A stretch of 64,000 nucleotides of DNA, from positions 163,432,001 to 163,496,000 of the forward strand of contig NC_086102.1 in NCBI RefSeq assembly GCF_963921235.1, read 5' to 3'. This document shows positions 1,678-53,681 of this stretch, in pieces. The stretch comes from Mobula hypostoma (lineage: Eukaryota). The position numbers were made by a program, and so were the translations under genes. The notes below the pieces were generated by a model that saw nothing but the letters and a program-made list of their open reading frames with translations, was not told where the DNA came from and made no database searches. The number at the start of each line of letters is the position of its first letter. Position 1 is the stretch's first letter.

Positions 1678-3330
1678 TATATGAAAACCAAGCTTCTTTA
1701 AGTCTAGGGGTAAAAAGATACAGTCTTACGATGTTGAGTAAAGTTCAGTTCAGTTCGTGGTATTTAGTTGAGTAGAGAGAGAGAGAGAGAGTGAGTGAGT
1801 TGAGTCTTCAGCTGAGCTGATGCCGTCGGGACCGGTCTTCTGTGGTGGAGCTATCACCCCGGCAAGGGTGGACACATAGACAACTCCCCACCAGTCAACC
1901 CCTTCTTTACGCTGGAATAGCAATTTGGATCAATCCGCCTGATCGATCCTCCAAAACCAACTCTTCCTGCGGGCACAACAATGCTCATTCAGTGTCCAGA
2001 TCATGTGCCCTGAGGTCTGTATCATCTGACCTCCCATTTATTTCACCAGGCTGAGCATCACCTGTCATTCAAAGAGTCCCTCCCTCCTTTGTCTGTAAAG
2101 GAGTGCACAAGCAGGCAACAAGTCCTTGGAAGTAACATCAACAACCAGCTGAAAATCATAACATCGAGTGTCCATTAAATAACACTGCCTTCGGTCACCA
2201 TAGCAGCTTTCGAGCTGCTCGGTGCTGTCTCCAACTTCAAACTCAGTAGAAATCCAAAGTTACTTCCAATGCCTTAAAGTGACAGTCCAACCATTAATCT
2301 TCATCTCTCGCTCTCTTTTCTAAAAGCAACATATCGGTGATAAATAACTCTGTCTCTCTCTCCTTTCCAAACAAACCATCAATGATAAATGTCTCTCCCT
2401 GTCTCTCTTCAAACAGTTAAAAGGGGCACTCCTGGATCCCCTCACAATGTGGGAGTTGATGGACCCCATTGTGATTCCTGGTGACCACATCTATAGCAAA
2501 TGCTGATTGCTCAAGGAAATCAGGCTCAAAATTGATTACCTAGAATCTGAGCCTCAATGGAAAGGGAGGGATAGCTGGACACTATGTTTTAAGAGGCAGT
2601 CACACTCATAAGATAAACTACTTCAAAATCAGTTTGTCGCCAGGGACAAGAGGATGTGATTGCAAGTGAGTCATGAAGGGGGATCCAAGAGTTTGCCTAA
2701 CAGATCTGAGATTGCTGCTCCCTGAAAGGAAGAGAGTGGGAGGTCTGTAGGAAGGATGAGCAACCAAACTATGACACCATAGCTCAGGGAACCATTCAAG
2801 AGGGGGAGAAAAGAGAAACGCAGTTGTAATTGGGAACAGTATAGTCAGAGGAATAGACACAATTCTTTGTCACACGGATCAATAGTCCAGAAGGCTGTGT
2901 TGTCTGCCTGATGCCAGAGCTCAGGATATCTCATCTATCCTACAGAGAAATTTGGAGTGAAGGGGAAAGATTACAGTGGTTGTGGTCCATATGGGTACCA
3001 ATGACATAGGAAAAACAAGGGAATAGACTCTGCTGGTTCAGATCATATTTTGCTGATGGAATTTAAGCAAGTTGGAACTAAACTAAAAGAGATCCAAAAA
3101 AAGTAATAACCTCTAGATTGTTACCAGAGTGAAGTGCAAATTTGCAAAGGGTTTATAAGAACAAATAGCTAAATGTACGGCTCAAAGATTGGTATGGGAG
3201 TAGGTTTGAATTGTGCAACATGGGCACCAGGATCGGAGGAGGAAGCTGTTTTGAGAGGAAGGGCTCTACCTGAACCAAACTGGGACCAGGGACCAGGAAC
3301 CAGGCAAATCACACGGCTACGACTTTAAAC
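1420..3330 (+). mobile_element. Decayed CR1 LINE ORF1 region (zinc finger + SGNH esterase), split by a solo LTR
   Basis: MWE...GDHI.SKC motif spans the LTR; esterase motifs VVIGNSIVRGID..LCCLP.AR and VVVHMGTNDIG at about 2820-3010. Confidence 0.7.
1463..2446 (-). mobile_element. Solo LTR (Gypsy-like), 984 bp
   Basis: TGT...ACA termini, 4-bp TSD ATGT (1459-1462, 2447-2450); host CR1 rejoins across it. Contains (TA)n and (GA)n tracts. Strand inferred from AATAAA position. Confidence 0.75.
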
Positions 3331-12120: not shown

Positions 12121-13029
12121 TTATACAATGCCTTAGTCAGGAGGAAAAGTTCACAACTCATTCTCTGGGCTAAGAACGTTTGACTAAAAACCTGGCCAAT
12201 GTGACTGGTACACAGGAGGAGGCTGAGGGAAGCGCAGCGTTTAGGCTGAAAGGACTGGAGTGATGAAGCAAAGGAAGGAGGAGGGGCTGAGGACTTAGCT
12301 GAAAGAGAAACGTTGCTGGATTTGCGATGCAAATAACATTAAGCTAGGTCACGGAAGGACTTCGAAACAAAAATGACAATTTTAAAATGCAGTGGATGAG
12401 ACTTAATGTGGTTTGGGACACAGGTGGTAGGGATTCAGAGTGCCATAAGTTCATTAGAGTGTTTCAGGCTGACAATAAATGTTGTACATAAGAGGTTCCA
12501 CAGCAGATGGGCAGTAGCAGGTGCTGACCTGGGCAGAGATGGAAGAATGCAGTTTTTGAACAGATCTTAAGTGCTACAGTTTTAAATGAATGCCTCAAAG
12601 CATAGATCCCTTGACAATGCGCCAAACTACGAAATCAAAAGCATAGCATTTCAAAAATACAGGCGTAACTGACACTTGCTCCAATGAAGGCTTTGTGCCA
12701 AATCCACTGCATGTCAAATCTAACTGCATTTGATTTCAGAATTTTGATGGTTGTTTGTTTACTTTCATACAATATTGTTGTTTCTGTTGATATATGTTTT
12801 TTCTTCGCCAAATTATGAAGAATATTTAGAATGGGAGCACAGAATCTTAAGCAGTGAGTCCAATTTGAATAAAAAGTCCACATGTGCATTTTCAGAGGAA
12901 ATCGTTCACATATTAAAGACACAATTATTGAAATTTGGATATCAATTCCTACTATATACTTTTGAAACAGAAATATGGCAGAAACAACTGTGCAACCAAT
13001 TATAATCTTTCTGCTAAATATTTTAAGTT

Positions 13030-15180
13030 TACACAAGTTCAAGTTTATTGTCATCTGACTGTGTGTGTATGTGTGTGTATACAGTATATATGCAACCAAA
13101 CAACATTCCTCCAGACCACGGTGCAATGTATCACACACAGCACATAAACCAAAATATTCTACTACACAAAAATAAACAGAATGTAATTTAAATGCATGTA
13201 CTAAAGTGCAGCAGAGGTAAACAGTAAACAACTCGCTGTCCTAGTGACAAGACCTTGGTGGCAGCAGGATAATTCAATAGTCTCACAATCTGAGGGAAGA
13301 AGCTGTTACCCACTCCAGCAGTCCTAATCCTGATGCTTCTGTACCTCCTTCCTGATGGTAGTGGGTCAAAGAGATTGTGCGATGGCTGGTAAGGATCCTC
13401 AACAATGCTTTGGGCCCTTCATCTGCAACACTCCTGGTAAATCTCACAAACAGGGGGAAGGGAGTCCCCTGTGATCCTCTTGGTGTTTTTTTTCCTATCC
13501 TGTACAGGGTCTTGTGGTCTGATGCCCTTCAGCTTCTATACCACTCAATGACATTCTTGATGGTGCTCCTGTAGAACGTTGTTAGAATGAGGGTGAGGAG
13601 CCTTGCATGCCTCAATCTCTTTAGAAAGTGTAGACATGCTGTGCCTTCTTGACGAGTGAGGACGGGTACAGGTTAGATCATTCATTATCTGCATACCAAG
13701 GAACTTTGTGCTCTTTACTCTCTCCACAGCAGAGCCATTGACATGCAATAGAGAGCGGTTGACCTGTGTCTTCATGAAGTCCATAATCACCTCTTTTATC
13801 TTGTCCATGTTGAGACTCAGGTTGTTGTTTTCACACTATTTGAAAAGCCTCTCTACCAGTGCTCAGCATGATGGAGCTTGAGATGTTGCTGCTAGCTAGG
13901 ACTGACTAAGGCCTTTTCATCAAGAAGTCCAAGATCCAGTTAAAGAGAGGGGCATTGAGTCCCAACAAAGACAGTTTACCCAACAGCCTCTGAGGAATGA
14001 TCGTGTTAAATGCTGAGCTGAAGTCGATGAACAACATCCTGGCGTACAAGGCATAGTTTCCTAGATGGAACAGGACAAATGGTAGCCGAGGCTATGGCGT
14101 CATCCATGGACTGGTTTGAGTGGTAGGTGGAAGGTGAGATTTTATATAATCCATTACCAGCTGTTCTTAGCACTTCATGATTGTTAAAAGTCAATGCCAC
14201 TGGGCAATAATCATTTAGGCCCGTTACTACTGCTATCTTGGGCACGAAATGATTAGGGCTGTCTTGTAGCCTCAGGGACAGTGGACTGTTTCATTGATTC
14301 TATTATGGTTATTGGATTTATTGAGTATGTCTGCAAGAAAATTAATCTCCGGGTTGTATACGATGATATATGTGTACTTAGATAATAAATTTCCTTTGAA
14401 CTTTAAACTTTGAGATCGACATTAAGACTTCTGTTAGCTGGGTTGCACACTCCCTCGGCACCTGACCAATTATGTTGTCCAGCCCTGCAGCTTTGCATGG
14501 GTTTACCCTGGCTAGAGTCCTCCTCATCTCGGCTGTGCCAATTCCTCAGGCAGAGAAGGGGCTTTCCTCAATGTCACATCATTCAATTGGTGAAGTCATG
14601 CATAGAAAGCATTCAGCCCATCAGGAAGGTTGGCGCTGCTGCTGTTGACGTGCAGGGTGGACTCGTAATCAGTTATGGTTTGTGTACCTTGCCATGTGTG
14701 CCATGTGTCCCTGGTATCACAAAGGTGTCTCTGGATTTTCTGTGCATTCTCACACGTCGCCTTCCTGATGGCATGGGAGATTATGGCTCTTGCTGACCTC
14801 AGAGTCGTCCTGTCCCTCGATCTGAAGGCAGAGTCCCATTCCCTAAGCAGTGCAGGAGCCTCTGCAGTCAGACATGGTTTCTGGTTTCATAGTCCTTGGT
14901 AGTGTAGTGTTTAATCACGGCAACATCCTCATTGCACTGAGATTCCACGTATTTGTCAATGTTGACTTGATGATTGTAGGTAGCTACCTCTCTGAATACA
15001 CTCCAGTCTGCGCTTTAAAAGCAGTCATGCAGTGCTGAGGTGGCAACTTCTAGCCAGGTCCTGATCTCCCTGTGAACTGGCTTGAATCTTTTAACCAGTG
15101 GTCTGTTTGCAGAGATTAGAAAAACAGATAAGTGGTCTGAGTATCCGAGGTGAGGGTGGGGGATATCCTTGGGATAAACC
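13030..15180 (-). mobile_element. Decayed Rex1/Babar LINE
   Basis: PK...TGLNDYCPVALT and VERVKSTKFLG motifs; 3' tail near 13030; oppositely oriented tail fragment inserted at about 14290-14410. Confidence 0.75.
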
Positions 15181-22146: not shown

Positions 22147-25100
22147 ATAGAAAGAAAGTGGTTTTTTGTTTCAGAGGGGAAAAATCCAATTAGCAAACTT
22201 CATTTCTGCATACTCTGCAATTCACGGAAAGGGAGCAAATGAATGGTAAAATGTTTAGGGATTAGTTTTCATCTCATATAAATGCAAAAGATTGTAGTCC
22301 ATCAAAACCTACTCTATTCAGGATGAACGACACGAAAATGTTCTAGAAAAGAATTTTTACACAATAAATCGCCAATTTGAATTAATCATTGCAAATTAAG
22401 GTACCATATTTACATATGAAAAAGAGCTGTTCATGTGCATTTTACGCAATGTTTTTAATGGCGCTTCTACAACCTAATGATGTATAGTTGTAAAGTGAGG
22501 AACATCAATAACGAATATAGTCATTGTTAGGTTCCATAAACAACAGCCAACTTTATTTTGTGCTTTGCTCTGAAATATATGAGTTAATTCCAATGCTTGA
22601 CTGTTGATAATCAGGAGAATGCGCCTACGTTGTGTCAAAAGTTATTTCAAGTGAGCCCGGGAAGACGGGGATATTTTTGAATTGAACTTGCTGTGTGCAC
22701 TGTACATTGTTAACTGGTGAATCCAAACGAATGCATGGTGGATAATCCTTCGTTCCCTCCGTACTGCAACTTGCTAATGCTGCAGTGAGACATGAACCCT
22801 CACCCTACTATCTCGGGGGGGGGGGAGGAGGAGGGGGGAGCGGCTTCCAGTGGCTTATTTTTTTCATTTTGGTAAGGTGTCACAATAAGAGATGTTGAAA
22901 CTCATACAAAACTGGAAAATTGACAGCATGAGTACAAAGTTAGCAAGTGGTTGACGACAGCGAGGCACGATGTTTCACGGACTCGGGGAGGAAGAACAGC
23001 GGCAATGCACAGAGATCAGTGATAAAGCCACTGGAAGTACAAACCATAATTTCCAGGACGCCTGGCAAATGAGGTGACGAAGCATGATGAGAAACTATAT
23101 AGAATGATAGGCATTGTTCTAAAGAGGATGCGAATCGAAGAATCCGGAATTATGAAAGCTCAAATGATTGAAAATGACAGAGCAGTTTGAGAAAGTGGTT
23201 AATAAGATATACACAATTCAGTGTTTTACCAAAAAAAAAATAGAATACAAAACGTACGAAAGTTCTGCTGATGTATTTAAACACTTGGACCGGTCTCAAC
23301 TTTGTGTCCAACCTGGTCACTTCGTTATTGCAGACATAAGAGTCTTAAGAGCCCTGAAAAGGTTTAAGAATGGTTGTTAGAATGAAAGAGTACAGATACC
23401 AAGACAGTTTGGAGAAGTTGGGTTGTATTTCCTTCAAAGAAGAAGTCTGTGGAGAGATATGAAAGAAGTTCAAAGTTCAATATCAATTTATTATCGAAGT
23501 ACATACACGTCACCACATACAACCACAAGATTCGTTTTCTTGCGGGCATTCTCAGTAAATCTAATAAATATAATAGAATCAATGAAAGACCGCACCCAAC
23601 AGAGCGGACAGACAAGCAGTGTGCAAAAGTCAACAAACTGCAAATACAAAAGAGAAAAAAGGAAATAACAATAATGATTATAACAAAACAAAACGAAATA
23701 AATAATTATAAATACGTAGGTTAGTAATAAATATCGATAACGTGAGATGAAGTATCCTTGAAAGTGAATCCGTAGGTTGTGGGAACAGTTCAGAGATGGG
23801 GCGAGTGCAGCTGAAGGAAATTGTCCCTACTGATTCAAGAGCCTCATGGTTGAGTGGTAATAATTGTTTCCGTACCTGGTCGTGCGGGTCCTAAGGCTCC
23901 CGTACCATCTTCCTGATGGCAGCAGCGAGAAGAGCAGGGCCTGGGTGGTGGGGGATCTGGATGGATGCTGCTTTCCTGGGACACCGCTCTGTCTAGACGT
24001 GCTCGGGTGGTAGGGAGGGCTCAGATGGTGATGGACTGGGCCCTATCCGCTATTTTTTGTAGGTTTTTCTGTTCAGGGGCATTGGTGTTTTCATACCAGG
24101 CCGTGATGCAACTTGTCAATATACTCTCCATCACACATCCACAGGAGTTTGTCTAAGTTTTGGATGTCATGCCGAGTCCCTAGCAAACTTCTGAGGAAGC
24201 AGAGGCGCTGTCGTGCTTTCTTCGCAATTACACTTACACATTCAGCCCAGGAGAGATGCGCTGACATGATAACAACGAGGAATTTCAAGATGCTGACCTG
24301 CTCCTCCTCTGATTTCCCCGATGACGACTTGTTCTTGGACCTCCTCCTTGGTCTTGGTGACATTAAGTGAAAGGTTGTTGTTGTGACCCACTCAAACCGA
24401 TTTTCAATCCCCCTCCTTTAAGCTGAAACCTCTGTTGCAGCCTACGATAGCAGTGTCATCAGCAACCCTAAATTGCGACACTGGAGCTACATTTAGCGTC
24501 ACGGGCAGGGGTATAGAGCGAGCAGAGCAGGGGGGCTAACACAGATGTCGTTGAACGGCTTGTGGTCGGCAAGTGACGAAATCGAGGAACCGATTGCACC
24601 AGGAGGTATTGAGTCAAGGTCTTGAGGCATATTGATTAGTTTGAGGGGATGATAGTATTGAATGCCGAGCATCGAAATGCCGATACAGTATCGATATTGA
24701 ATGCCAGGCCATCAAGTCAATAAAGATCATCCTGATTAATGCATTTTTGCTGCCCAGATGTCCCTGGCTTGAGTGAACAGCCAATGAAGTGGTATCTTCT
24801 GTGGACCTGTTGTACCGATAGGCAAATTGGAGTGGATCCAATTCCCTTCTCAGGCAGGAGTTGCTATGTTTTCTTTGCCAACCTCTCAAAACACGACCAT
24901 GGCGGCTGTCAGTGTTGGTAGACGATCACCGTTGAGGCAAGCTATAACTTTCTTAAGTACCGAAATAATCGAAGCCTGCTTGAAGCCGAATGGTACCTCA
25001 GACTGCCGAAGCGAGAGGTTAAAGGTATCGGTGAACACTCCAGCCAGTTGGTTAGCGTTGGTCGTTAGTACTCGGCCAGCTACCCCTTCTGGGCCGGATG

Positions 25101-31419: not shown

Positions 31420-32200
31420 AAAATGCCACAAATGCTCAGCGGTCAGTCAGTATCTTGGAAGGAGAAGTACACCTATTTTTCTAGGTTTATGTTTTTTCAT
31501 CAGAACTGGGAAATATCAGAACTGTAACGGCTTGTAAACAAGTGCAGATGCAAAGAGAGGCAACATTGAAAAAATGAAGGAAGATATGGGTCCAAGGCAG
31601 AATACCTTAAAATAAAAAAGGAACGAGCCAGTGTGAAAGAATAAAAGAAACAAATGATGATTATGAAGTAGAATTATTACTAATCTTTGTTAAGTAGAGA
31701 ACAATTGGACAGGATTCACGGGAAATTGTTAAATTCAGTGGACAGTCCATAAGTGCCTAAGTGAAAGGTGTAGTGTATTCTCCAATATATTTTGTTTCGG
31801 ATGAAGCATTCCAGCATGAATAGACTGGCCTTGTTTCACATAGAACTTAGGGAGCTGAGGGGAAAATAACCGCGTTATACCAAATTACGAGGGTAGATAA
31901 GGAGGAGCCTTTTCCCCTTACCCTTAAAACCAGAGGATTTAATGTCAGGGCAGGAGATTGAAATGGAACTGCATGAAAATTCTCTTTCACTCCGCAAGCA
32001 TTAAAATCTAAAGCAGACCGTCAGGAGGGCGAGCCTGCGGGGAAAAGGGTGGGGGAGCTATTCGGAACAGAGAGTCTCTCAATATTTAAGGAGTATTTCG
32101 ACAAGCGCTTGAGCTGTCATAGCATAGAAGGCAAAGGGTCAATGTGGGAAATCCAATTAGTATGGATGGGTACTTAATGGTCGGCAAGGACGCGAGGGGC
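31420..32200. mobile_element. Old Penelope terminal fragment plus CR1 3' remnant; last clear TE block before the cluster
   Basis: aaatgctcagcggtcagtcagtatct Penelope-type end; CR1-like gagggtagataaggaggagccttttccc...atttaaggagtatttcgacaagcgcttga. Confidence 0.5.
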
Positions 32201-33075
32201 TATGCCAGTCTTTGGCATTTATCCTGAATCTTGCGGGCGCAGTGTTTGCAGTTGACGATATAGAGTTCAGAGTGCTGGCACAGGTACTCTGTAAGGTGTT
32301 TATTCTCCATGATGTAGAAAAGAACATTACACATAAGAGCTGAACTGCACCATTTGGGCCCATCAACCATGTTAAGGGCCACGTGCACAGATCGAATCTG
32401 GAACAAGTAGCGATAAATCTTTGCTCATGTTTGCTCCTTGACAGTTGAGAAGTCAGGATACACGATATCTGATATTCCATCTTAGCAGATGATGCCACAC
32501 AAGGACCCGAATGACCGGAGAATGGGCTGGCGAGATTGCGATGAGAAAGGTTCCCTCGGAAATGCCCAAGGAGGAGGAGGATAAGGAGACGCGTTTGTTA
32601 GTAATCGCCTGCACCCGGTGGCAAAAACGACAAAAGATGGGCCCTTGAATGTGCGGACCATGTTTATATTCGGGCACACTGATTAACTCAGATCAAAACG
32701 GAGAATGACTGCCGTAGACTGAGGCTATCCAATATTTCACTGCGACAAATCTTTCTTTGCCAGAGGGCTCCTTTATTGCATTATTTTTGTTAGCAGTAAA
32801 TTTCGCAGAAACATTGGAATCCCTCCAGCGCTGACTGAAATATGCACTCCATGTGATATTAGTTAATTGTAACAAACTTTAGTATTAAATGATTAACCTT
32901 TCAATATACAGCAATTTAGATAAATATTTTATGATGGACTACAAACCTCAAAATTAATCGAAATTAGCGAACAGCCCATGTGATACGCCCTTCCACCAAC
33001 GCAATGAATTGGCGGCATATTAATTGTGCGTCAGCCCGAAAATAAGGTTAAATATTCATTTATGCAGTGCCACAG

Positions 33076-33088
33076 TGAACTTTGACCC
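33076..33088 (-). promoter_or_regulatory. DR1 nuclear receptor element
   Basis: Minus strand GGGTCA-a-AGTTCA, about 200 bp from the DR5. Confidence 0.55.
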
Positions 33089-33289
33089 ATGAGTCTATTT
33101 AAAGACAAGATGAACGCGTCGCCTTAATTTACTGATTTACCTTAAGCATTAAAAGCAAAAAAAAACCTCATTAAATAAAGATAATCATATGTTTCGTACA
33201 GGTTATTTTTGACTTTAAAAAGACTGAGAAATAGTGATCACAATAGGAAGCCTTGAAGAGTAAAGATCGATCTGGTTAATTTTTTTTCA

Positions 33290-33306
33290 TGAACTTTCAG
33301 TGAACC
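33290..33306 (-). promoter_or_regulatory. DR5 retinoic acid response element 3' of HoxD1
   Basis: Minus strand GGTTCA-ctgaa-AGTTCA; one spacer base differs from the Hoxa1 3' RARE GGTTCAccgaaAGTTCA (from memory). About 3.1 kb downstream of the stop. Confidence 0.8.
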
Positions 33307-34144
33307 TGGTTCTGGGGGTGGGGTCGGTGGGATGCCTGCTATGGTTCACCCTTTCACAACCCCTTTCAGGCAGAGTAAATATTGAATAGTTCTTCCGCTG
33401 TGAGCAGAAGTAAAACGGGATATCAAACAAGTGCAAACGAGTATTGTGGCCCTTTACAATACAGTCACAGTAACGAACAATTTTCGCATTGTGCTAATAA
33501 AATGCCGAGCATCCCCCACGTCTTCAGGAGCTTTGGGGAGTAATCACGACTGGGATCAGAGGTACGATAAGATAAAAGCGAACAATAGGCGCCTAACAGC
33601 AAGGGACAAGACAAAAGACCTGCTAGTTTATAACATGCAATCGCACCAGGATATGCCATCTCCCGAGGCGTAACGGAGCATCACTTACTTATACTCCCCA
33701 AAAGCACCAAATTTTAAAACCACTATCCCGGTCTGTGTGTAACATACGTTTTTCCTAAAAGCAAAATAAATATTAAATGCAATCATCTTTTAGACGAACA
33801 ATTTCCCTGGGCATAGAAAATACAACGACCGTCCCCTACGAGTCATCATCAAAGGAATGTGGATTTCATATCAAAGATTTCCGAGTTGATTCCCAAGGAG
33901 GTCATTGTAAAATTTACGACTTCAGCCAGTCTTTGAAATGCCGCTTCTTGGGGCCTGATGTGTATTATTTCAGTGGAACTGTAATTAACACTGAGTTGGT
34001 AGGACCAAATGGTCGAAACATTTGGATGTAAAATATTGGCATATTGATTGAGTCCTCTTTTGCTGGTTTTATTAGAAACCTGTGTAGTTCTAGAATATGC
34101 AACTTGTTTGAATTACACAGAAACACAGAACAGCAATCAAAACC

Positions 34145-36439: not shown

Positions 36440-36804
36440 TTATTTCAATTCAGCAAGTTTCAGAGAATCTGACGTGCCCTTTGTTGGTGACGAGGGGAAC
36501 GGCGAGGTAGAGTCCAATTTCTCAGAAGTTTTTATGAACGGTAAGTCGTCACTGCTGCCTAAACAGGTTAGACTGGCCAGGAGGCCTTCTCTCTCTCTCT
36601 TCTTTTGCTTCATTCTTCTGTTCTGGAACCAAATCTTCACCTGGGTTTCACTGAGTTGTAAGGCGTTAGCTATTTCCACGCGCCTGGTTCGAGTTAAGTA
36701 TTTATTGAAATGAAATTCCTTCTCCAGTTCCGTCAGTTGTTTGGTGGTGAAATTTGTACGAGCTGTGTTTGGAGAGCTGACGACCCCGTACTCGGTTGCT
36801 TTGG
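36440..36804 (-). CDS. hoxd1: HoxD1 coding exon 2 (homeodomain)
   Basis: Acceptor cctttgtag|CC is in phase with exon 1. Homeodomain [59 protein letters not shown]. Joined CDS 948 nt = 315 aa; intron 319 nt. Confidence 0.95.
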
Positions 36805-37123
36805 CTACAAAGGACATACAGTATGGTTATGTATAGCATTTCGTGGAAAGCACAGACAAGTTAGTTAGCAAGTACATTTCAGCATTGGCATTTTCCCCGT
36901 GTAATTTGTATTTAGAACGATTTGGTTCACTTTTCTCATGCTCAGATAAAATTACTGCCAGCGATATGAATATGGAAAGCAAAAAGAATCGACCTCACCC
37001 TTGCTGATTACTGTCTCGTTTTAAGGGTTAACATAATTATTGCTTCGGACATACCTAACAGAAGACACCCGCGCGACCGCAGATCCACAGGCGAAGAGGT
37101 CACCCACAGGGCTTTACACTGAC

Positions 37124-37706
37124 CTGTTTTGGGGGGATTTCTCTTCACTTTCATCCATTCGAAGGTATTTGCAGTGAGGATCTTTTCCATTGTGGGAGAC
37201 TCTGGACTCTGGTAGATGCTCTGAGAAGGGGATAGACTCTGATATTGCCCGGAGTAAAAGTTTGCGAACTCATTGCCATAGCTTTGGTATTGCTCCTGCT
37301 CCCGCTCCTGCTCACCAAAGACACTGTACTCGTGCTGGCGCGTACTGATCGGATAAGATGTGCCTCCCGAGTAAACAGAGGTGGTGTATGGGATAAGTCC
37401 CCCAGTGTCATCCAGCTGCTGGTTAGCAGCATAAGCAAAGTCGCAGCCGTGATGACTCGGAGGTAAGAGGTTAATGTCTGCAGTTGGAGAGGAGTTGCAG
37501 GAAAGTTCGAAGCTACCCGGTACGGCCTGATGAAGGTGATTAAGGTGATGACGGCTGGGAGATGGATCACCTTCCGGTCCAAGTGCTATGTACCGACCTT
37601 CTCCGGTGCACTGCTTCAACGAGACAGAAGGAGAATTACTGCGACAGAACTTTGGAGAAAACGTCAGAATATCTGCACTGGGAATATATTCTAAATAAGA
37701 GTTCAT
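37124..37706 (-). CDS. hoxd1: HoxD1 coding exon 1
   Basis: ORF starts MNSYLEYI and ends with the PG1 hexapeptide region NTFEWMKVKRNPPKT. Donor ACAG|GTCAGT at 37124/37123; 583 nt, phase 1. D-cluster identity from Mtx2 linkage and homeodomain residues. Confidence 0.95.
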
Positions 37707-53637: not shown

Positions 53638-53681
53638 TGAACTCTGCTTGAACCTAAATCGCAGCCATGGGCCATAAATCA
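53638..53681 (-). promoter_or_regulatory. DR5 RARE plus Pbx-Hox site upstream of HoxD3
   Basis: Minus strand GGTTCA-agcag-AGTTCA (53654-53638) and TGATTTATGG (53681-53672). Matches the conserved Hox3-associated DR5 class. Confidence 0.82.

What the first reader, a model, noticed from the sequence alone, without database searches (positions are those of the whole stretch)
32990..33400. Hoxa1-type 3' retinoic acid enhancer retained at HoxD1 (DR5 + DR1 module)
Seen: perfect DR5 GGTTCActgaaAGTTCA (33306-33290) in the gene's orientation 3.1 kb past the HoxD1 stop, perfect DR1 GGGTCAaAGTTCA (33088-33076), TGATTTAC (~33134) and Fox-like GTAAATATTGA (~33375). Known: Hoxa1 and Hoxb1 have 3' DR5 RAREs, and the Hoxa1 element is GGTTCAccgaaAGTTCA. 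I do not recall an equivalent characterised at mammalian Hoxd1. Inference: a paralogous enhancer that predates the genome duplications survives on the chondrichthyan D cluster, with the DR1 possibly adding COUP-TF/RXR input.
Basis: partly seen in the sequence, partly recalled or inferred. Interest (0 to 1): 0.8.

Follow-up and report, generated by a model that had tools for sequence, protein, structure and literature searches.

The report
HoxD1 3' retinoic acid enhancer, ancient paralogue
About 3 kb downstream of a ray's HoxD1 gene lies a 1-kb conserved non-coding element with a perfect retinoic-acid-receptor site, and its ordered motif blocks match the known enhancers behind Hoxa1 and Hoxb1, so it is very probably a third surviving copy of a pre-duplication Hox1 retinoic-acid enhancer.

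Summary
The gene is an intact, spliced HoxD1 on the minus strand, and its stop codon lies 3,134 bp upstream of the DR5.

The motifs sit in a roughly 1-kb conserved non-coding element (34038-33012). This element is shared with sawfish, sevengill shark and elephant shark HoxD1. The DR5 lies in the longest invariant run of that alignment.

Four ordered blocks recur with the same spacing behind elephant-shark HoxA1 and, with a longer DR5-to-DR1 gap, behind emu Hoxa1:
- Fox-like TCAATATTTACTCTG
- DR5, 79-90 bp further 3'
- DR1, about 210 bp further 3'
- AT-rich block, 24 bp further 3'

The emu DR5 is exactly GGTTCACCGAAAGTTCA. The Fox-like block and DR5 also lie behind a bird Hoxb1. The paralogous-enhancer reading is therefore supported.

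- The DR1 is ancestral and shared with HoxA1. It is not an addition at D1.
- TGATTTAC is not conserved.
- The element extends about 700 bp further towards the gene.

That extension includes a TCF/LEF-like block also found behind frog and turtle Hoxd1, each followed 320-344 bp later by a DR5. Guinea pig shows nothing within 10 kb.

Function is inferred, not tested. Reviews list no Hoxd1 RARE, but one in-silico survey could not be read.

The parts
37124..37706 (-). HoxD1 exon 1 (start codon to splice donor)
   Evidence: ORF and donor site. The junction 36804|37124 is seen in RNA contigs of the same species. It is 97% identical to Mobula birostris Hox-D1-like.
36440..36804 (-). HoxD1 exon 2 with homeobox; stop codon at 36442-36440
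   Evidence: Homeobox signature. The spliced translation is intact at 315 aa.
33012..34038 (-). Whole conserved non-coding element 3' of HoxD1
   Evidence: 73% identity over 1,053 aligned columns to the Callorhinchus HoxD1 3' flank, flanked by unalignable sequence. 55% of columns are invariant in four chondrichthyans. It is single-copy in the window and every frame is full of stops. There is no Rfam match.
33848..33937 (-). D1-specific 5' block. It carries three TCF/LEF-type cores (TTCAAAG, ATCTTTGATATG, CCTTTGAT) and a nuclear-receptor half-site (ATGACCTCC, 33905-33897).
   Evidence: Conserved in four chondrichthyans. A profile of the element finds it behind Gopherus Hoxd1 (E 1.2e-5). A sub-profile built without the frog finds it behind Xenopus hoxd1 (E 0.0019). 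It is absent from the A1, B1 and guinea-pig loci.
33400..33676 (-). Highly conserved D1-specific core upstream of the Fox-like block
   Evidence: 37-44 of every 50 columns are invariant among four chondrichthyans. Invariant runs reach 19 bp, for example CTGAAGACGTGGGGGATGC and GTTTGCACTTGTTTGATAT. No counterpart was detected in the A1 or B1 loci.
33371..33385 (-). Fox-like block TCAATATTTACTCTG, 79 bp 5' of the DR5
   Evidence: The core CAATATTKACTC occurs once in the window (0.02 expected). It occurs exactly once in each chondrichthyan D1, Callorhinchus A1, emu A1 and Trogon B1 locus, always 79-90 bp 5' of the DR5. It is absent from the three tetrapod D1 loci.
33290..33306 (-). DR5 retinoic acid response element GGTTCActgaaAGTTCA, in the sense orientation of the gene
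   Evidence: It is identical in Pristis, Heptranchias and Callorhinchus HoxD1. It lies inside the longest invariant run of the 1.3-kb alignment, 20 bp at 33307-33288. It differs from the emu Hoxa1 DR5 by one spacer base.
33076..33088 (-). DR1 element GGGTCAaAGTTCA, 219 bp 3' of the DR5
   Evidence: It is conserved in Pristis and Heptranchias, with one mismatch in Callorhinchus D1. It is identical behind Callorhinchus HoxA1, 208 bp after that gene's DR5, and is GGCCAAAGTTCA in emu A1.
33048..33063 (-). AT-rich block ATAAATGAATATTTAA, 24 bp 3' of the DR1
   Evidence: Invariant run ACTGCATAAATGAATATTT in four chondrichthyans. The same block with the same 24-bp offset is found at Callorhinchus A1 and emu A1.
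33133..33140 (+).
   Evidence: In the four-species alignment only the AATCA part is shared. Pristis, Heptranchias and Callorhinchus differ at the other positions.

Best explanation
The interval is the 3' part of a roughly 1-kb cis-regulatory element (window 34038-33012, minus strand) lying 2.4-3.4 kb downstream of HoxD1. It is the D-cluster ohnologue of the Hoxa1 and Hoxb1 3' DR5 RARE enhancers.

Likely mechanism:
- RAR/RXR heterodimers occupy the DR5.
- They hold the locus repressed without ligand and recruit co-activators when retinoic acid is present.
- This gives early, direct retinoic acid activation of HoxD1, and possibly of neighbouring HoxD genes.
- The fixed-distance Fox-like site, and the DR1 with its AT-rich block, are co-factor sites inherited from the pre-duplication Hox1 enhancer. 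The DR1 type of site is bound by RXR, COUP-TF or HNF4.
- The D1-specific 5' block, with TCF/LEF-type cores, may add Wnt input.

Shown here: sequence, position, orientation, deep orthologous conservation, and paralogous conservation of block order and spacing.

Inferred: which proteins bind, retinoic acid dependence, and which gene is the target.
For: - The motifs are present as described.
- The identical DR5 lies 2,994-3,253 bp past the HoxD1 coding end in four chondrichthyans, including a holocephalan.
- It lies in a discrete conserved element, inside the longest invariant run of the alignment.
- Block order is Fox-like block, DR5, DR1, AT block. Offsets are 79-80, 206-219 and 24-25 bp in D1, and 90, 208 and 24 bp in Callorhinchus A1.
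- Emu Hoxa1 has offsets of 82, 532 and 24 bp, and its DR5 is GGTTCACCGAAAGTTCA.
- Trogon Hoxb1 has the Fox-like block and a DR5, 84 bp apart.
- With the DR5 removed, the 130 bp upstream of it still aligns between D1 and A1 or B1 better than 499-500 of 500 shuffles, z 5-14.
- A profile of the D1 element finds emu A1 (2e-8), Callorhinchus A1 (3e-8) and Trogon B1 (4e-4).
- The element is non-coding, not repeated, and matches no Rfam family.
- Both half-sites are those of the emu Hoxa1 DR5.
Against: - There is no binding, accessibility or reporter data for any HoxD1 element.
- Mouse ES-cell data show little RAR occupancy on the HoxD cluster (PMC4510006).
- The guinea-pig Hoxd1 flank has none of the blocks within 10 kb. 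The element is therefore dispensable in at least one lineage.
- The identities of the Fox, TCF/LEF and DR1 binding factors rest on consensus resemblance only.
- The target gene is assumed from proximity.
Confidence: 0.8

Rival explanations
1. The conserved stretch is a transcribed functional RNA: a long HoxD1 3' UTR, an lncRNA exon or an enhancer-associated transcript. On this view conservation reflects the RNA rather than DNA-binding sites.
For: RNA-library contigs of the same species lie on 32028-33120, which includes the DR1 and AT block. One contig from another species covers 33200-33419, which includes the DR5 and Fox-like block. Both are at low depth. A metaxin-type gene model spans the homologous Mobula birostris locus.
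Against: - Contigs are fragmentary and low-depth, and could be intronic RNA or DNA carry-over. The tool itself warns of this.
- No contig covers 33476-34460 in any of the four runs. In the same-species run X19 the gap runs from 33121 to about 34460, so most of the conserved core has no same-species contig.
- There is no Rfam match.
- Conservation between paralogues is confined to short motif-sized blocks at fixed spacing. This is the pattern of transcription-factor sites, not of an RNA.
- The HoxD1 3' UTR conservation block is separate, at 36300-35616.
Confidence: 0.05
2. It is a conserved enhancer descended from the Hox1 retinoic acid enhancer, but at D1 it no longer mediates a retinoic acid response. 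Alternatively, it mainly serves another gene, such as Mtx2 or Hoxd3/d4. Nuclear receptors other than RAR (COUP-TF, HNF4, RXR homodimers) would then use the DR sites.
For: - The DR1 type of site is bound by several receptors. DR1, DR2 and DR5 are stated as RAR/RXR targets in PMC3534614.
- Weak retinoic acid response and weak RAR occupancy of HoxD in mouse ES cells.
- A metaxin gene lies in or next to the locus.
Against: - All 17 bp of the DR5, spacer included, are invariant across four chondrichthyans including a holocephalan. This indicates selection on a complete DR5, not on half-sites.
- The half-sites equal those of the Hoxa1 element.
- Frog hoxd1 is reported as a direct retinoid target and keeps a DR5 at the collinear position.
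Confidence: 0.12
3. The DR5 and DR1 are chance matches in AT-rich intergenic DNA and have no function.
For: A single relaxed DR5 in 64 kb is not rare. 3 of 100 shuffles give two or more.
Against: Identical sequence, position and orientation in four species, and in paralogous loci with the same neighbouring blocks.
Confidence: 0.01

Closest known systems
[quoted passage not shown] 1997, as cited in PMC4510006 and PMC3227721; the name 'RAIDR5' for it is from my memory)
   Same: - It lies about 3 kb 3' of a group-1 Hox gene: 2,915-2,956 bp at A1 against 3,134 bp here.
- The DR5 is in sense orientation with the same half-sites (GGTTCA and AGTTCA). Only one spacer base differs from emu Hoxa1.
- It has the same Fox-like block 82-90 bp upstream.
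- It has the same DR1 and AT-rich block downstream.
   Different: - It stands behind HoxD1, not HoxA1.
- The D1 element has about 700 bp of extra conserved sequence on the 5' side, including a TCF/LEF-like block, with no A1 counterpart.
- No functional data exist for D1.
- I could not read the original papers, so I could not map the published conserved elements CE1-CE3 onto these blocks.
Hoxb1 3' DR5 RARE enhancer (Langston et al. 1997; Thompson, Huang and Gudas 1998, whose title gives the name RAIDR5, seen; Huang et al. 2002)
   Same: Fox-like block TCAATATTTACTCAG, followed 84 bp later by the DR5 GGTTCAcacaaAGTTCA, behind a bird Hoxb1. It is found by the D1 profile at E 4e-4.
   Different: It lies 4.9 kb from the gene. 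No DR1 or AT block was detected.
AmphiHox1 3' DR5 RARE (Manzanares et al. 2000; Wada et al. 2006, as summarised in PMC3227721)
   Same: A DR5-type RARE at the 3' end of the single pre-duplication Hox1 gene. This is the expected ancestor of all vertebrate copies.
   Different: I could not fetch amphioxus sequence. Whether the Fox-like, DR1 or AT blocks exist there is unknown.
RARbeta2 promoter DR5 (betaRARE)
   Same: From my own knowledge, its DR5 has the same sequence as the Hoxa1 DR5. It therefore differs from this one by a single spacer base.
   Different: It is a promoter-proximal element of an unrelated gene, with no shared flanking blocks. This is functional resemblance only.

Membership tests
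Hox group-1 3' DR5 RARE enhancers (Hoxa1/Hoxb1 3' RARE type) | Located a few kb 3' of a paralogue-group-1 Hox gene, at the 3' end of the cluster | tested here: met
   3,134 bp past the HoxD1 stop codon. Hox3, Hox2 and Hox1 lie in order on the minus strand. A metaxin gene is at the Mobula locus.
Hox group-1 3' DR5 RARE enhancers (Hoxa1/Hoxb1 3' RARE type) | Consensus DR5, (A/G)G(G/T)TCA N5 (A/G)G(G/T)TCA, in the sense orientation of the gene | tested here: met
   GGTTCActgaaAGTTCA at 33306-33290, minus strand. It has the same orientation as in the A1 and B1 loci.
Hox group-1 3' DR5 RARE enhancers (Hoxa1/Hoxb1 3' RARE type) | Sequence homology of the flanks, not just the DR5, with the Hoxa1 and Hoxb1 enhancers | tested here: met
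   - The Fox-like block, DR1 and AT block are shared in order and spacing.
- Flank-only alignment has z 5-14, with 0-1 of 500 shuffles reaching the score.
- nhmmer E-values are 2e-8, 3e-8 and 4e-4.
Hox group-1 3' DR5 RARE enhancers (Hoxa1/Hoxb1 3' RARE type) | Conservation among orthologous loci | tested here: met
   The DR5 is identical in a ray, a sawfish, a sevengill shark and a chimaera, and lies in a 1-kb conserved element. Frog and turtle show partial conservation: the TCF-like block plus a DR5. Guinea pig shows none within 10 kb.
Hox group-1 3' DR5 RARE enhancers (Hoxa1/Hoxb1 3' RARE type) | RAR/RXR heterodimer binds the DR5 | not testable with these tools
   Inferred only, from half-sites identical to those of the emu Hoxa1 DR5.
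Hox group-1 3' DR5 RARE enhancers (Hoxa1/Hoxb1 3' RARE type) | Retinoic-acid-dependent enhancer activity that is lost when the DR5 is mutated | not testable with these tools
   No reporter or chromatin data. The only indirect support is that Xenopus hoxd1 is reported as a direct retinoid target (PMC13446568).

The most novel reading that the evidence does not exclude
Cartilaginous-fish HoxD1 preserves the complete grammar of the pre-duplication Hox1 retinoic acid enhancer: a Fox site, DR5, DR1 and AT-rich block at fixed spacing. It also carries a D1-specific TCF/LEF block.

In bony vertebrates this ohnologous enhancer decayed stepwise. Frog and turtle keep only the TCF/LEF block and a rewritten DR5. 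A mammal keeps nothing nearby.

This would give a sequence-level explanation for two things. One is why Hoxd1 remains a direct retinoic acid and Wnt target in Xenopus. The other is why it lost its early retinoic acid and hindbrain role in mammals. It would also show that the DR1 and AT block are an unrecognised ancestral component of the classical Hoxa1 enhancer.
Probability: 0.35. Interest if true: 0.7.

Novelty: new member of a known kind. Interest (0 to 1): 0.55.

Why it matters
- Hox1 3' RAREs are the textbook link between retinoic acid and the start of Hox collinear activation. Reviews list functional RAREs only at Hoxa1, a4, b1, b4, b5 and d4.
- A third, well-preserved paralogue at HoxD1 shows that the whole multi-site enhancer survived the genome duplications on three clusters, not just a DR5.
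- The three-way comparison defines which sites are ancestral: the Fox-like block, DR5, DR1 and AT block.
- It gives a concrete candidate for the direct retinoid, and possibly Wnt, response element of Hoxd1 known from Xenopus.
- It offers a natural series (chimaera, shark, ray, frog, turtle, mammal) for studying how an ohnologous enhancer decays.
- It is an incremental result rather than a conceptual one, because an amphioxus Hox1 3' RARE is already known.

Tried and rejected
- **blastn against tetrapod flanks.** Comparing the ray 3' flank with the frog, turtle and guinea-pig Hoxd1 flanks found nothing at E below 1e-3. A profile search later found the 5' block in turtle and frog.
- **Frog and turtle DR5 flanks.** These do not align with each other or with any other locus. 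Orthology of those DR5s therefore rests only on collinearity with the TCF-like block and on similar distances.
- **A flawed score.** My first flank-only score was inflated because masked N runs matched each other. I discarded it and redid the test.
- **An amniote element.** A conserved element further 3' of turtle and guinea-pig Hoxd1 carries no DR motif and has no similarity to the ray element.
- **Coding exon, repeat or known RNA family.** All rejected.
- **DNA that could not be fetched.** Mobula birostris, Carcharodon and Hemitrygon loci were not retrievable because the files were too large.
- **Literature.** No paper in the library mentions a Hoxd1 RARE. Mainguy et al. 2003, Marletaz et al. 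2006 and Ravi et al. 2009 were asked for and are not held. Langston et al. 1997 and Wada et al. 2006 are subscription-journal papers that I did not try to fetch. My last paper search was badly framed and gave nothing.
- **Earlier scan notes.** None mention a RARE in this genome.
Full report
**1. Observation**

- DR5 GGTTCActgaaAGTTCA, 33306-33290, minus strand.
- DR1 GGGTCAaAGTTCA, 33088-33076, minus strand.
- TGATTTAC, 33133-33140, plus strand.
- GTAAATATTGA, 33375-33385, plus strand.

Under the relaxed half-site consensus RGKTCA, the window holds two DR5s against 0.21 expected, with 3 of 100 shuffles reaching two. It holds two DR1s against 0.16 expected, with 0 of 100. Alone, these counts are only suggestive.

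**2. Gene context**

Three homeoboxes lie on the minus strand, in the order Hox3 (about 49.2 kb), Hox2 (about 44.7 kb) and Hox1 (about 36.6 kb).

The Hox1 gene has exon 1 at 37706-37124 and exon 2 at 36804-36440. The spliced product is intact at 315 aa. RNA contigs from the same species show exactly this junction, skipping 36805-37123.

Exon 1 is 97% identical to Mobula birostris 'Hox-D1-like'. It is 72% identical to horn shark HoxD1, 61% to Callorhinchus Hox-D1 and 30-42% to tetrapod Hox-D1 over near-full-length alignments. Against Callorhinchus Hox-A1 it is only 38% identical, over a part. At the Mobula birostris locus a metaxin-type gene overlaps the region. The gene is therefore HoxD1 of a devil ray. 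An earlier scan note names the lesser devil ray.

The DR5 begins 3,134 bp after the stop codon.

**3. Orthologous conservation**

I fetched HoxD1 with 10-kb flanks from Pristis pectinata (L001), Callorhinchus milii (L002) and Heptranchias perlo (L003).

All three carry the identical 17-bp DR5 in sense orientation, 2,994, 3,059 and 3,253 bp past the coding end. It is the only strict DR5 in each 21-kb locus.

Against the chimaera, similarity in the 3' flank is confined to discrete blocks:
- a probable 3' UTR at 36300-35616;
- a short block at 35259-35102;
- a 1,027-bp element at 34038-33012, 73% identical.

In a four-species alignment, 55% of columns are invariant. The longest invariant run is the 20 bp containing the DR5 (33307-33288).

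The DR1 is conserved in the sawfish and shark and has one mismatch in the chimaera. The Fox-like TCAATATTTAC is conserved, with TATTGAC in the chimaera. TGATTTAC is not conserved.

A 31-mer index search found large parts of the element in runs from at least eight other species labels.

The element is single-copy in the window, has 12-23 stops in every frame in every species, and matches no Rfam family.

**4. Paralogous conservation**

I fetched Callorhinchus HoxA1 (L007), emu Hoxa1 (L008) and Trogon Hoxb1 (L009).

Four blocks recur in the same order: a Fox-like block (TCAATATTTACTCTG), the DR5, the DR1 (GGTCAAAGTTCA) and an AT-rich block (ATAAATGAATATTTAA). In the table, each offset is measured from the start of one block to the start of the next. 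The DR5 distance is measured from the coding end.

| Locus | DR5 | DR5 distance (bp) | Fox→DR5 (bp) | DR5→DR1 (bp) | DR1→AT (bp) |
|---|---|---|---|---|---|
| Four chondrichthyan D1 | GGTTCACTGAAAGTTCA | 2,994-3,253 | 79-80 | 206-219 | 24-25 |
| Callorhinchus A1 | AGTTCATCGAAAGTTCA | 2,915 | 90 | 208 | 24 |
| Emu A1 | GGTTCACCGAAAGTTCA | 2,956 | 82 | 532 | 24 |
| Trogon B1 | GGTTCACACAAAGTTCA | 4,903 | 84 | not detected | not detected |

In emu A1 the 5' half of the DR1 is eroded to GGCCAA.

The 12-mer core CAATATTKACTC occurs once in the window, against 0.02 expected. It occurs exactly once in each of the six A1, B1 and chondrichthyan-D1 loci, and in none of the tetrapod D1 loci. The DR1-to-AT pattern occurs once in each chondrichthyan D1 locus and each A1 locus.

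With the DR5 removed, the 130 bp upstream still aligns between D1 and A1 or B1 with z 5-14, with 0-1 of 500 shuffles reaching the score.

An nhmmer profile of the D1 element finds emu A1 (2e-8), Callorhinchus A1 in one alignment spanning all four blocks (3e-8), and Trogon B1 (4e-4).

This is homology of the enhancer, not convergence on a receptor site. The DR1 is therefore an ancestral component shared with HoxA1. It is not an extra input acquired at D1.

**5. Tetrapod Hoxd1**

I examined Xenopus tropicalis (L004), Gopherus evgoodei (L005) and Cavia porcellus (L006).

None has the Fox-like, DR1 or AT block anywhere in its 21-kb locus.

Frog and turtle each have one strict sense-strand DR5. The frog's is GGGTCAgcttgAGTTCA and the turtle's is GGGTCAgacagAGTTCA. 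They lie 2,114 and 2,162 bp past the coding end. Their immediate flanks do not align with anything.

The D1 profile also finds the turtle at 12906-13048 (E 1.2e-5). That match corresponds to a 5' sub-block of the ray element, window 33937-33848. This sub-block carries:
- three TCF/LEF-type cores (TTCAAAG, the invariant ATCTTTGATATG, and CCTTTGAT);
- a nuclear-receptor half-site (ATGACCTCC).

A sub-profile built without the frog finds the frog block at 13043-13159 (E 0.0019).

In frog and turtle, the DR5 follows the end of this block by 344 and 320 bp. In the ray the gap is about 500 bp. Collinearity and near-equal spacing make it likely, though not proven, that the frog and turtle DR5s are the diverged orthologues.

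The guinea pig has no DR5 within 10 kb 3', even allowing one mismatch, and no TCF-like block.

**6. Mechanism**

Established knowledge:
- DR5 elements with these half-sites bind RAR/RXR.
- They repress without ligand and activate with retinoic acid.
- DR1, DR2 and DR5 are the spacings that RAR/RXR uses (PMC3534614).
- Functional RAREs drive early Hoxa1 and Hoxb1 expression (PMC4510006; PMC6767176).

Inferred for this element:
- It confers direct retinoic acid inducibility on HoxD1.
- The Fox-like site (TATTTAC matches the forkhead core TRTTTAC) and the DR1 with its AT block act as cooperating sites.
- The TCF/LEF cores give Wnt input.

[quoted passage not shown] None of the protein assignments was tested.

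**7. What is known**

Reviews and primary papers in the library list functional RAREs at Hoxa1, Hoxa4, Hoxb1, Hoxb4, Hoxb5 and Hoxd4, and none at Hoxd1. HoxD shows little RAR occupancy in mouse ES cells. No paper that could be searched pairs Hoxd1 with a RARE.

An in-silico survey is cited as finding putative RAREs for all hindbrain Hox genes of human and mouse (Mainguy et al. 2003). I could not read it. It may already list a Hoxd1 element.

The amphioxus Hox1 3' DR5 RARE is known, so a pre-duplication origin of the Hox1 RARE is not new.

What appears new is:
- the D1 copy itself;
- its full four-block paralogy with A1 and B1;
- the D1-specific block shared with frog and turtle.

**8. Verdict**

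The element is a new member of a known kind. Confidence is about 0.9 that it is a homologue of the Hoxa1/Hoxb1 3' RARE enhancers. Confidence is about 0.8 that it works as a retinoic-acid-responsive enhancer of HoxD1. Interest is moderate.

Noticed in passing
window 53638-53654 (minus strand): This is the second strict DR5 in the window, GGTTCAagcagAGTTCA, upstream of the Hox3 gene on the side facing Hox4. About 20 bp before it lies TGATTTATGGCC, which combines Pbx-Hox-like and Cdx-like motifs. It may be the Hox4/Hox3 intergenic RARE known from other clusters. Conservation could not be tested because the fetched loci do not reach it.
   Followed up: partly
window 23467-23479 (plus strand): This is the second strict DR1, AGTTCAaAGTTCA, about 13 kb 3' of HoxD1. 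It lies outside all fetched orthologous flanks, so its conservation is unknown.
   Followed up: no
window 32028-33120 and 33200-33419: Low-depth contigs from RNA-labelled libraries lie on the 3' part of the enhancer. Those from the same species cover the DR1 and AT block. One from another species covers the DR5 and Fox-like block. They could be enhancer RNA, intronic RNA of a metaxin gene model, or DNA carry-over.
   Followed up: partly
window 44725 region (minus strand): A Hox2-type homeobox with unusual residues ([20 protein letters not shown]) lies between Hox3 and HoxD1. A HoxD2 gene is therefore retained here, as an earlier scan note also says. A 363-364-aa homeodomain gene is called at the same relative place in sawfish, sevengill shark and elephant shark.
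   Followed up: partly
L005 16063-17029 and L006 19952-21277: A separate element is conserved between turtle and guinea pig, up to 79.5% identity over 244 bp. It lies 5-10 kb 3' of Hoxd1, carries no DR motif and has no similarity to the ray element. Its function is unknown.
   Followed up: partly
L004 about 13405-13420: Read by eye from the sequence printed, the frog hoxd1 flank has a forkhead-like AAATGTTTATTTCTG roughly 95-100 bp 5' of its DR5 (position approximate). It resembles the Fox-like block in sequence and offset, and could be a diverged remnant. The turtle shows none.
   Followed up: partly
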